A DNA stretch of 63,341 nucleotides, the filler included, from Octopus bimaculoides (lineage: Eukaryota): the NCBI RefSeq assembly GCF_001194135.2. It is 7 parts of 6 records of this genome, joined end to end, with 100 filler letters (N's around TTAATTAATTAA, not from the genome) between each part and the next. Parts side by side here need not be neighbours in the genome. Positions count along the whole stretch, not along the records: positions 32,477 to 41,053 come from NC_068989.1; 6 more parts are not named here. The stretch is one strand, 5' to 3'. This document shows, piece after piece, positions 35,331 to 35,670 of this stretch. The notes beneath the pieces were generated by a model that saw only the letters and a list, made by a program, of their open reading frames with translations, ran no database searches and was not told the DNA's origin. Within the stretch, counting starts at the first letter, position 1; each line of letters begins with the position of its first letter. A program made the position numbers and the translations under genes.

Positions 35331-35410
35331 GCTGGTATTGTGTCTAGTATTCTTGCGGTGTGAGCGGTGATATAATAATTCCTTATCTCGTTGACGTTGT
35401 TGTGAAATGG

Positions 35411-35542
35411 CGGCTCGTCCGTCGACGAAGAGCGCGGCTATCCACGTGAACTGATGCGAATTGCAGGACTCAGTGAACATCGACACCTCGAACGCACATT
35501 GCGGCCCCGGGATCCCATCGTCCTGGGGCCCCGTCCGGTCGA
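35411..35542 (+). rRNA. Solitary 5.8S rRNA-derived copy (5'-truncated, probable pseudogene)
   Basis: CGGCTCGTCCGTCGACGAAGAGCGC...GAATTGCAGGAC..AGTGAACATCGACACCTCGAACGCACATTGCGGCCCCGGG...GGGGCC follows the metazoan 5.8S consensus, including the conserved GAATTGCAG motif. No 18S or 28S sequence nearby. Confidence 0.9.
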
Positions 35543-35559
35543 CAGAAGAGTCTTGTGAA

Positions 35560-35670
35560 GGCGCATGGCTCAGTTGTTAGAGCGTCGAGCTTACGATCGT
35601 GAGGTTGTGAGTTCGAATCCCGGACCGGGCTGTGTGTTATGTTCTTGAGCAAGACACTTTATTTCATTGG
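35560..35670 (+). mobile_element. tRNA-derived SINE family D, 5' part
   Basis: GGCGCATGGCTCAGTTGTTAGAGCG A-box, GAGTTCGAATCC B-box and TGTTCTTGAGCAAGACACTTT core. Confidence 0.9.

What the first reader, a model, noticed from the sequence alone, without database searches (positions are those of the whole stretch)
35400..35670. Orphan 5.8S rRNA copy abutting a tRNA-SINE head: possible 5.8S-SINE chimera
Seen: ~130 nt of 5.8S rRNA lacking the first ~20 nt, with no 18S, 28S or long ITS context. It ends 17 nt before a family D SINE head. TTGTGAA occurs on both sides of the 5.8S piece (35400-35406 and 35553-35559). Established: 5.8S is cut from a Pol I precursor, so a stand-alone copy implies reverse transcription of processed RNA; small-RNA/retroelement chimeras arise by template switching, and SINE heads derived from 5S and 28S are known. 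Inference: either a one-off 5.8S retrocopy with a 7-bp TSD, or a chimeric retrotranscript that could belong to a 5.8S-headed SINE family.
Basis: partly seen in the sequence, partly recalled or inferred. Interest (0 to 1): 0.7.

Follow-up and report, generated by a model that had tools for sequence, protein, structure and literature searches.

The report
Orphan 5.8S rRNA copy fused to SINE
A decayed, stand-alone copy of 5.8S ribosomal RNA sits 3-6 bases upstream of the first base of an octopus SINE repeat, most likely a one-off by-product of reverse transcription, an ordinary kind of genomic fossil rather than a new mobile-element family.

Summary
The 5.8S call holds. Rfam RF00002 scores 76 bits against a cut-off of 42. 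The copy is 91% identical over 135 nt to genuine 5.8S genes. It lacks 5.8S nt 1-21 and has no 18S, 28S or ITS beside it.

Two details of the finding change:
- Six SINE heads, five of them from Octopus vulgaris, all begin GTG(A/G), most as GTG(A/G)AGGC. The head here therefore starts at 35555, not 35560.
- CAGAAGA is the 3' end of 5.8S, not ITS2.

So the 3' end of 5.8S lies 3-6 nt (GTCTT) from SINE base 1, in the same orientation, not 17 nt away.

Five of the seven bases of the second TTGTGAA belong to the SINE. The flank repeat is weak: 2-4% of local control windows score as well. Clean SINE target-site duplications (TSDs) here are 13-14 bp.

Best reading (about 0.5): one chimeric retrocopy. 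Reverse transcriptase reached the 5' end of the SINE RNA and continued on 5.8S rRNA. The SINE body was lost later.

Main rival (about 0.2): a separate 5.8S insertion at the edge of a SINE already in place.

A 5.8S-headed SINE family has no support, but no octopus genome could be searched by DNA, so it was not tested genome-wide.

The parts
35411..35549 (+). 5.8S rRNA retrocopy, homologous to 5.8S nt 22 to about 158. A decayed pseudogene (about 9% substitutions against the closest genuine 5.8S found, plus a 1-nt loop insertion).
   Evidence: Rfam RF00002, 76 bits. Alignment A3. BLASTN 91.1% over 135 nt to L013-L026. End of the Rfam model mapped.
35550..35554 (+). Linker GTCTT between the 5.8S 3' end and SINE base 1. 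The true length is 3-6 nt, depending on the exact mature 3' end. Its origin is open: non-templated bases, a 3' U-tail, or the first bases of ITS2.
   Evidence: Alignments A3 and A2. It does not match the start of ITS2 (GAAAATGG...) in the reference rDNA units.
35555..35668 (+). SINE 'family D' fragment, bases 1 to about 114 of an element of roughly 350 nt. The 5' end is complete. The body and the LINE-type tail are missing.
   Evidence: 83% identity over 112 nt to O. vulgaris copy L012:11835-11724 on the minus strand. Alignment of four copies. 5' start defined by six heads.
35566..35576 (+). Pol III box A-like motif TGGCTCAGTTG
   Evidence: Read directly from the sequence. Matches the consensus TRGCNNAGTGG at 10 of 11 positions (established knowledge).
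35610..35620 (+). Pol III box B-like motif AGTTCGAATCC
   Evidence: Read directly from the sequence. Matches the consensus GGTTCGANNCC at 10 of 11 positions. The antisense translation of the head matches tRNA-array translations.
35400..35406 (+). Upstream TTGTGAA. It lies 4 nt (ATGG) before the first clearly 5.8S base and resembles units of the adjacent minisatellite (for example TTGTGGAAATGATGG at 34942).
35553..35559 (+). Downstream TTGTGAA, made of the last two linker bases (TT) plus SINE bases 1-5 (GTGAA).
35700..35856 (-). Context: a SINE of another family in the opposite orientation. Its tail end points towards the truncated family D fragment.
   Evidence: 77% identity over 93 nt to L012:11999-11907. 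Sequence reading. Its limits and any TSD are not established.
34320..35399 (.). Context: GT-rich minisatellite (units such as GTGGTGGTT and GTAGTAGTT, spaced 9, 12 or 15 nt) that forms the 5' flank of the 5.8S piece.
   Evidence: Repeat families D1, D2, D4 and D5. GC skew of +0.7 to +0.98.

Best explanation
This is a single chimeric retrocopy that was inactive from the moment it formed.

Proposed sequence of events:
1. A LINE reverse transcriptase was copying a family D SINE RNA at a nicked target site.
2. It reached the 5' end of that RNA and added or bridged a few bases (GTCTT).
3. It carried on along the 3' end of a mature 5.8S rRNA, either by jumping between templates or because the two RNAs had been ligated beforehand.
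4. It stopped at 5.8S nt 22.
5. The cDNA was joined into a GT-rich minisatellite.
6. Later the SINE body and tail beyond base 114 were lost, and another SINE now lies there in the opposite orientation.

The 5.8S part has no promoter and no function and has decayed neutrally.

Shown: the identity and limits of both parts, their shared orientation, and the 3-6-nt junction.

Inferred: that one event made both parts, the template switch itself, and the later deletion.
For: - The 5.8S is genuine but orphan and lacks nt 1-21. 5' truncation of the template copied last is what incomplete reverse transcription produces.
- Its 3' limit coincides with the mature 3' end of 5.8S. No ITS2 is recognisable: CAGAAGA aligns with GAGAGGCG. 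This points to processed RNA rather than rDNA as the source.
- SINE base 1 is at 35555, defined by six independent heads and two flush 13-14-bp TSDs. The junction is therefore end to end, with only 3-6 bases between, and both parts are on the + strand. This is the arrangement of known small-RNA/retroelement chimeras: small RNA at the 5' side, retroelement at the 3' side.
- My estimate for an independent insertion landing within a few bases of a same-orientation SINE 5' end is about 1-3 in 1000. It uses the SINE-head density seen here: 3 heads in 7.3 kb and at least 5 in 20 kb.
- The only observation that speaks against the chimera is the flank repeat, and 2-4% of local control windows match it.
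- Rough ages are compatible. The SINE head has at least 4 private substitutions in about 112 nt. The 5.8S differs at about 9% from a reference that is probably not the same species.
- L1 chimeras with U6, 5S, 28S, tRNA, 7SL and Y RNAs are documented (bioRxiv 10.1101/2025.02.02.635956).
Against: - The SINE part stops at base 114 and has no tail. The site where reverse transcription would have started is therefore gone, and an extra deletion has to be assumed.
- No TSD flanking the whole unit could be found; scores are at or below the 95th percentile of the null.
- TTGTGAA occurs on both sides of the 5.8S piece. That is what a separate insertion with a short TSD would leave.
- No second copy and no orthologous locus could be examined.
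- The closest 5.8S references come from an unidentified metazoan, so the divergence estimate is only an upper bound.
Confidence: 0.5

Rival explanations
1. Two events. A family D SINE was already in place. A 5'-truncated 5.8S cDNA was later inserted at its very 5' edge by target-primed reverse transcription. The staggered cut duplicated TTGTGAA (two flank bases plus SINE bases 1-5), or a longer stretch (TTGTGAA..ATGGC) that later lost 5 nt.
For: - TTGTGAA on both sides, with only three copies in the 7.3 kb of readable sequence.
- An exact shared 7-mer is expected in about 0.75% of cases.
- The upstream copy is followed by ATGGC, which also follows in the SINE after GGCGC.
- Solitary retropseudogenes of small RNAs without poly(A) tails are well known (PMC5322556).
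Against: - The repeat is not flush with the 5.8S homology: ATGG lies between on the left and 1-3 nt on the right.
- 2.1-3.8% of local control windows reach the same gapped score, and the upstream copy looks like a minisatellite unit.
- The two clean TSDs of these SINEs are 13-14 bp, not 7.
- The cut would have to straddle a SINE 5' boundary, about 1-3 in 1000 by my estimate.
- 5.8S has no A-rich 3' end or LINE tail to prime on.
- Retropseudogenes of Pol I rRNAs are rare in human (PMC5322556).
Confidence: 0.2
2. DNA-level or transduction origin. One form: an rDNA unit with a SINE inserted just inside ITS2 gave a pre-rRNA-derived transcript or a DNA fragment that was copied to this site. Another form: a 5.8S fragment was captured as filler DNA during repair of a double-strand break.
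For: - The linker GTCTT could be the first bases of ITS2, which is unknown for this species.
- The locus is rearranged: a truncated SINE, a SINE in opposite orientation and a minisatellite lie together.
Against: - No ITS1 and no recognisable ITS2.
- The linker does not match the start of ITS2 in the closest rDNA units found.
- The right-hand limit lies at the mature 3' end of the RNA, which points to processed RNA.
- It needs a rare source locus.
Confidence: 0.12
3. This locus is one member of a propagating composite SINE family whose 5' end is a 5.8S fragment.
For: - SINE heads derived from 5S, 28S and snRNAs exist (PMC10946416; PMC4494074; PMC4994717).
- The junction is a clean 5.8S-SINE fusion.
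Against: - None of the six other SINE heads examined (the window copy at 39943 and five in O. vulgaris L012) has 5.8S upstream. All follow unrelated flanks.
- There is no second 5.8S-like stretch in the piece or in L012.
- The A and B boxes lie downstream of the 5.8S part, so Pol III would start at the tRNA-like head and leave the 5.8S out (inference from established Pol III type 2 promoter behaviour).
- This copy lacks the SINE tail that mobilisation needs.
- A 2024 review table of rDNA pieces inside transposable elements lists no 5.8S-derived SINE (PMC10946416).
- The sample searched (about 27 kb) is far too small to exclude a rare family.
Confidence: 0.04
4. An older solitary 5.8S pseudogene, next to which a SINE later inserted by chance.
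For: SINEs are dense here, about one head per 2.5-3.5 kb.
Against: - The SINE 5' end would have to land within 3-6 nt of the 5.8S 3' end in the same orientation, about 1 in 1000.
- TTGTGAA is left unexplained.
- The SINE head does not look younger than the 5.8S piece.
Confidence: 0.05

Closest known systems
Chimeric retrocopies of small RNAs joined to a retroelement (U6/L1, 5S/L1, 28S/L1, tRNA/L1 and others in mammals; tripartite chimeras in Magnaporthe)
   Same: A cellular non-coding RNA lies on the 5' side and a retroelement on the 3' side, in the same orientation. The junction joins the small RNA to the retroelement. The explanation is template switching of a LINE reverse transcriptase, or RNA ligation before reverse transcription (PMC2104539 abstract).
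   Different: - The partner is a SINE rather than a LINE 3' end.
- The small RNA is 5.8S, which is not among the RNAs listed in the survey read.
- The host is a cephalopod.
- The retroelement part has lost its 3' end, and no TSD for the whole unit is visible.
Tailless or 5'-truncated retropseudogenes of structural RNAs
   Same: A stand-alone copy of a processed structural RNA without poly(A), 5'-truncated in the way reported for the few 18S and 28S cases (PMC5322556).
   Different: - Those cases are defined by clear 8-35-nt TSDs. Here the only candidate is a weak 7-mer.
- Pol I rRNA sources are reported as under-represented in human: two 18S and ten 28S cases, and no 5.8S case mentioned.
SINEs with rRNA-derived heads (5S-derived SINE3-type families; 28S-derived SINE28)
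   Same: An rRNA-derived segment at the 5' end of a SINE-like sequence (PMC10946416; PMC4994717).
   Different: Those are multi-copy families. In the 5S-derived ones the head carries its own Pol III promoter. Here there is one locus, no promoter in the 5.8S part and no tail.
rDNA orphons and dispersed rDNA fragments
   Same: rRNA gene sequence outside the rDNA array.
   Different: Orphons carry spacer sequence or neighbouring genes. This piece ends at the mature 3' end and has no ITS1, no 18S or 28S, and at most 3-6 nt that could be ITS2.

Membership tests
5.8S rRNA (Rfam RF00002), functional gene | Covariance-model score at or above the gathering score | tested here: met
   76 bits against 42. 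Genuine genes score 108-141 bits.
5.8S rRNA (Rfam RF00002), functional gene | Full length, with an intact 5' end | tested here: not met
   Homology starts at 5.8S nt 22.
5.8S rRNA (Rfam RF00002), functional gene | Lies between ITS1 and ITS2 inside an 18S-5.8S-28S unit | tested here: not met
   No SSU or LSU hit in the piece. The flanks are a minisatellite and a SINE.
Template-switch or ligation chimeric retrocopy | Two unrelated RNAs joined in the same orientation, with the cellular RNA at the 5' side | tested here: met
   5.8S at 35411-35549 and SINE at 35555-35668, both on the + strand.
Template-switch or ligation chimeric retrocopy | The junction uses the 3' end of the small RNA | tested here: met
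   The 5.8S 3' end is at 35548-35551 and SINE base 1 at 35555, a gap of 3-6 nt.
Template-switch or ligation chimeric retrocopy | One pair of TSDs flanks the whole chimera | tested here: inconclusive
   The SINE 3' end is missing. No flank match exceeds the 95th percentile of the null.
Template-switch or ligation chimeric retrocopy | The 3' part ends with the retroelement's own 3' end or tail | tested here: not met
   SINE homology stops at about base 114 of roughly 350. A later deletion has to be assumed.
Solitary retropseudogene with TSD | Direct repeats flush with the insert, beyond chance | tested here: inconclusive
   TTGTGAA occurs twice. It is not flush, five of seven bases are SINE sequence, and 2.1-3.8% of local control windows score as well.
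SINE family with a 5.8S head | Many dispersed copies share the 5.8S-SINE junction | not testable with these tools
   No octopus genome can be searched by DNA. None of the six other heads has 5.8S upstream. Protein-level searches across the junction found nothing relevant.
SINE family with a 5.8S head | A promoter that transcribes the whole unit, head included | tested here: not met
   The only A and B boxes (35566-35576, 35610-35620) lie 3' of the 5.8S piece. That Pol III starts near box A is established knowledge.
SINE family with a 5.8S head | A LINE-related 3' tail | tested here: not met
   The copy ends at SINE base 114.
   Related copies in O. vulgaris L012 at 11835 (minus), 18213 (plus) and 5418 (minus). 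Clean 13-14-bp TSDs are seen on sister-family copies with the same 5' start.
   ARAGORN finds none. Rfam finds no tRNA even at E<=10. A and B boxes match at 10 of 11 positions each. The antisense translation matches translated tRNA arrays, E 7e-12.

The most novel reading that the evidence does not exclude
The junction is not unique. Either this is a decayed member or founder of a small octopus repeat subfamily in which a 5.8S fragment travels with a family D SINE (for example by read-through or Pol II transcription). Or octopus LINE reverse transcriptases jump onto 5.8S rRNA often enough to leave many independent 5.8S-SINE chimeras. No 5.8S-derived retroelement part appears in the literature I read.
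Probability: 0.05. Interest if true: 0.65.

Novelty: new member of a known kind. Interest (0 to 1): 0.3.

Why it matters
Taken as a single locus, this is a small genomic fossil. It shows that a Pol I-derived, nucleolar and ribosome-bound RNA was reverse transcribed in the octopus germ line. The clean end-to-end joint with a SINE 5' end hints that the SINE's partner LINE enzyme can jump between templates. That is the step thought to build composite SINEs.

It would matter more if a genome-wide search showed the junction to be recurrent. Octopus would then have a 5.8S-derived retroelement component, which the reviews and surveys I read do not list. The locus could also serve as a presence/absence marker among Octopus species.

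Tried and rejected
1. RNA-editing signature. Against bivalve-type 5.8S references the copy showed an excess of T>C (6) and A>G (2) among 15 mismatches. Against the closer 5.8S type found later these positions are shared with genuine genes. The excess was an artefact of distant references, so I dropped the idea.

2. Reaching the octopus genome.
- A protein search with the 60-aa ORF spanning the junction found nothing.
- A metagenome scan with a SINE-head 21-mer returned eight unrelated loci: bacterial DNA and tRNA-like repeats of other invertebrates.
- Scans of viral contigs returned 0.
- A full HMMER search of 1.84 billion proteins returned three translated tRNA arrays and one unrelated tandem-repeat protein.
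- Only one 20-kb O. vulgaris locus could be fetched, through a SINE-derived annotated protein.

3. The antisense frame through the whole 5.8S piece, its junction with the SINE and the upstream flank, used as a protein query in the hope of an orthologous or paralogous ORF, found only genuine rDNA.

4. Naming the organism behind the closest rDNA units (L013-L026). No names in the cluster tables. No paper cites the accessions. No octopus SINE in their spacers. Their 18S is 2.6 kb long and 60% GC. From memory that fits coleoid cephalopods, but this is unverified.

5. A TSD for the whole 5.8S-SINE unit: nothing above the null.

6. A mariner-like remnant at about 36880-37240, suspected from the ending ...LRGEYVK*: no Pfam support.

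7. Rfam microRNA hits at 38100-38650 are far below their gathering scores and lie in (TA)n/(CA)n repeats. I dismissed them as low-complexity artefacts.

Full report
**1. What is there**

Rfam places a 5.8S rRNA match at 35396-35548 on the + strand. It scores 76 bits against a gathering score of 42, with E 6e-18. Nothing else in 32477-41053 reaches a gathering score. There is no SSU or LSU rRNA hit even at E<=1. The microRNA hits lie in (TA)n/(CA)n repeats and are far below threshold.

Genuine 5.8S genes fetched for comparison score 108-141 bits. The copy is therefore recognisable but damaged.

**2. References for 5.8S**

No octopus rDNA could be reached directly, so I used two sets of real rDNA units.

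- Eukaryotic rDNA contigs inside bacterial genome bins. One is from a symbiont bin of a lucinid bivalve (L010). The others are L009 and L011.
- Fourteen fetched stretches from eight contigs (L013-L026), each holding at least part of an 18S-5.8S-28S unit. I found them because their antisense 5.8S ORF shares the peptide PQCAFEVSMFTESCNSHQF with the window.

The window copy is 91.1% identical over 135 nt (35411-35545) to the second set. Against the first set it mismatches at 15 of the 108 columns where the three references agree.

The organism behind the second set is not named anywhere I could look. Its 18S is 2.6 kb long and 60% GC. From memory that fits coleoid cephalopods, but this is a lead and not a result. 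The 9% divergence is therefore an upper bound.

An apparent T>C and A>G excess against the bivalve-type references disappeared with the closer references. There is no editing signature.

**3. Limits of the 5.8S piece**

In alignment A3 homology begins at 35411 (CGGCTCG), which is 5.8S nt 22. The four bases before it (ATGG) cannot be assigned.

At the 3' side, window CCCGTCCGGTCGACAGAAG aligns base for base with CCCGTCCGGTCGAGAGGCG, the last bases of the Rfam model in the genuine genes. The mature end falls at 35548-35551. ITS2 in the references starts GAAAATGG, which is not present here.

**4. Where the SINE starts**

One protein search with a SINE-derived ORF hit an annotated Octopus vulgaris protein. 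That gave 20 kb of chromosome OX597820.1 as locus L012. L012 holds five SINE heads of this and sister families.

Those five heads, plus the full-length copy in the window (39943 to about 40326), all begin GTG(A/G) directly after unrelated flanks. Five of the six continue AGGC. Two of them have clean TSDs flush with that G: TATTATATGTTTT (13 bp) in the window and ACATGTCCAACCCA (12 of 14 matching) in L012.

The head next to the 5.8S piece therefore starts at 35555 (GTGAAGGCGCATGG...), not at 35560. Homology to family D copies runs to about 35668, which is 114 of roughly 350 nt. The body and tail are missing.

ARAGORN and Rfam do not call the head a tRNA. It does have box A (35566-35576) and box B (35610-35620), each matching at 10 of 11 positions. 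Its antisense translation matches translated tRNA gene arrays at E 7e-12.

**5. Resulting anatomy**

| Coordinates | Element |
|---|---|
| 34320-35399 | GT-rich minisatellite |
| 35400-35406 | TTGTGAA |
| 35407-35410 | ATGG (unassigned) |
| 35411-35549 | 5.8S nt 22 to 3' end |
| 35550-35554 | GTCTT linker |
| 35555-35668 | SINE D bases 1-114 |
| about 35669-35699 | T-rich stretch |
| about 35700-35856 | another SINE, minus strand |
| after 35856 | (GTT)n-rich flank |

The 5.8S 3' end and SINE base 1 are 3-6 nt apart and in the same orientation.

**6. The TTGTGAA repeat**

The repeat is real. Its second copy is TT plus SINE bases 1-5. The first copy sits in sequence that resembles minisatellite units, for example TTGTGGAAATGATGG at 34942, TTGTGATAATGATGG at 34843 and TGTGATGGCGG at 35212.

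Chance levels:
- An exact 7-mer of the 3' junction window is expected in the 5' junction window in about 0.75% of cases.
- With a gapped local score, 2.1% of all control windows and 3.8% of minisatellite windows do as well.

The repeat is not flush with the 5.8S homology on either side. The evidence for a 7-bp TSD is therefore weak, and 7 bp would be short beside the 13-14-bp TSDs of the two clean SINE copies.

**7. Weighing the models**

If the 5.8S piece and the SINE arrived separately, one end had to land within a few bases of the other's terminus, in the same orientation. With about one head per 2.5-3.5 kb, that is roughly 1-3 in 1000 by my estimate.

If they arrived together as one cDNA, the end-to-end joint is expected, and the only coincidence needed is the flank repeat (2-4%).

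Separate small-RNA retrocopies may be several times commoner than chimeras. Even so, the single-event reading comes out ahead, though not decisively. I put it at about 0.5.

The mechanism follows established behaviour of LINE enzymes. The reverse transcriptase reaches the 5' end of the SINE RNA, adds a few bases and continues on the 3' end of another abundant RNA. Alternatively the two RNAs are ligated first. This is inference, not shown here.

Against the single-event reading:
- The SINE tail, where priming must have occurred, is missing.
- No TSD for the whole unit is detectable.

**8. The family idea**

Nothing supports a 5.8S-headed SINE family.
- None of the six other heads has 5.8S upstream.
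- No other 5.8S-like stretch occurs in the piece or in L012.
- The promoter boxes lie downstream of the 5.8S piece, so Pol III copies of this locus would not include it.
- This copy has no tail.

The sample is only about 27 kb. The genome-wide junction search could not be run, because no tool searches octopus genomes by DNA. The protein-level substitutes found nothing relevant. I leave about 0.04-0.05 for a recurrent junction.

**9. Comparison with what is known**

L1 chimeras with U6, U3, U5, 5S, 28S, tRNA, 7SL, 7SK and Y RNAs are documented in mammals. Tripartite chimeras are documented in a fungus (PMC2104539). Tailless or 5'-truncated retropseudogenes of rRNAs are rare in human (PMC5322556). 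SINE heads derived from 5S, 28S and snRNAs exist.

5.8S appears in none of these lists, so the RNA species is new for the class. The class itself is well known.

**10. Verdict**

This is a real orphan 5.8S retrocopy, most likely one half of a one-off 5.8S-SINE chimeric cDNA, since decayed and truncated. It is of modest interest unless a genome-wide search shows that the junction recurs.

Noticed in passing
window 34320-35399: About 1.1 kb of imperfect GT-rich minisatellite (units such as GTGGTGGTT and GTAGTAGTT, spaced 9, 12 or 15 nt; GC skew up to +0.98). It creates long spurious ORFs on both strands: 315 aa His/Tyr/Asn-rich and 213 aa Val-rich. The 315-aa ORF starts inside the 5.8S piece.
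   Followed up: partly
window 39943-40326 (+): Full-length SINE of a sister family, with a perfect 13-bp TSD (TATTATATGTTTT at 39930-39942 and again after the element). Its head starts GTGGAGGCGCAATG. A 193-nt stretch of it is 86% identical to an O. vulgaris copy.
   Followed up: yes
window about 35700-35856 (-): SINE of a third family in the opposite orientation. Its tail points towards the truncated family D fragment. It seems to lack the middle of the element as I remember the consensus (not checked with a tool). It may be connected with the loss of the family D body.
   Followed up: partly
window 32477-32800 (+): Repeat-like sequence running into an (AAT)n run at 32800-32830, possibly the 3' part of another SINE cut by the edge of the piece. 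It has no match in the 20-kb O. vulgaris sample.
   Followed up: no
loci L013-L026 (ENA ERZ21867824, TARA SAMEA2622012, GCA_041192925.1, GCA_052426985.1, two Logan runs): Tandem rDNA units (roughly 12 kb apart on the longest contigs) of an unnamed metazoan, with an unusually long (2.6 kb), 60% GC 18S. Their 5.8S carries the same lineage-specific bases as the octopus pseudogene. Possibly cephalopod, but not verified.
   Followed up: partly
window 38100-38650 and 33190-33600: Long (TA)n, (CA)n and (GACA)n tracts with assembly gaps. These explain all the Rfam microRNA-family hits (mir-297, mir-466, mir-3149), which score 25-38 bits against cut-offs of 81-100.
   Followed up: yes
window about 36880-37240 (+): A stretch whose translation ends ...KELCNKCVNLRGEYVK*. 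It reminded me of the C-terminus of mariner-type transposases, but Pfam gives no match.
   Followed up: yes
L012 16064-16441 and 17228-17578: The O. vulgaris annotation carries 'hypothetical predicted protein' models that are plain ORFs over SINEs and microsatellites. The protein P0001 used here is itself SINE-derived.
   Followed up: no
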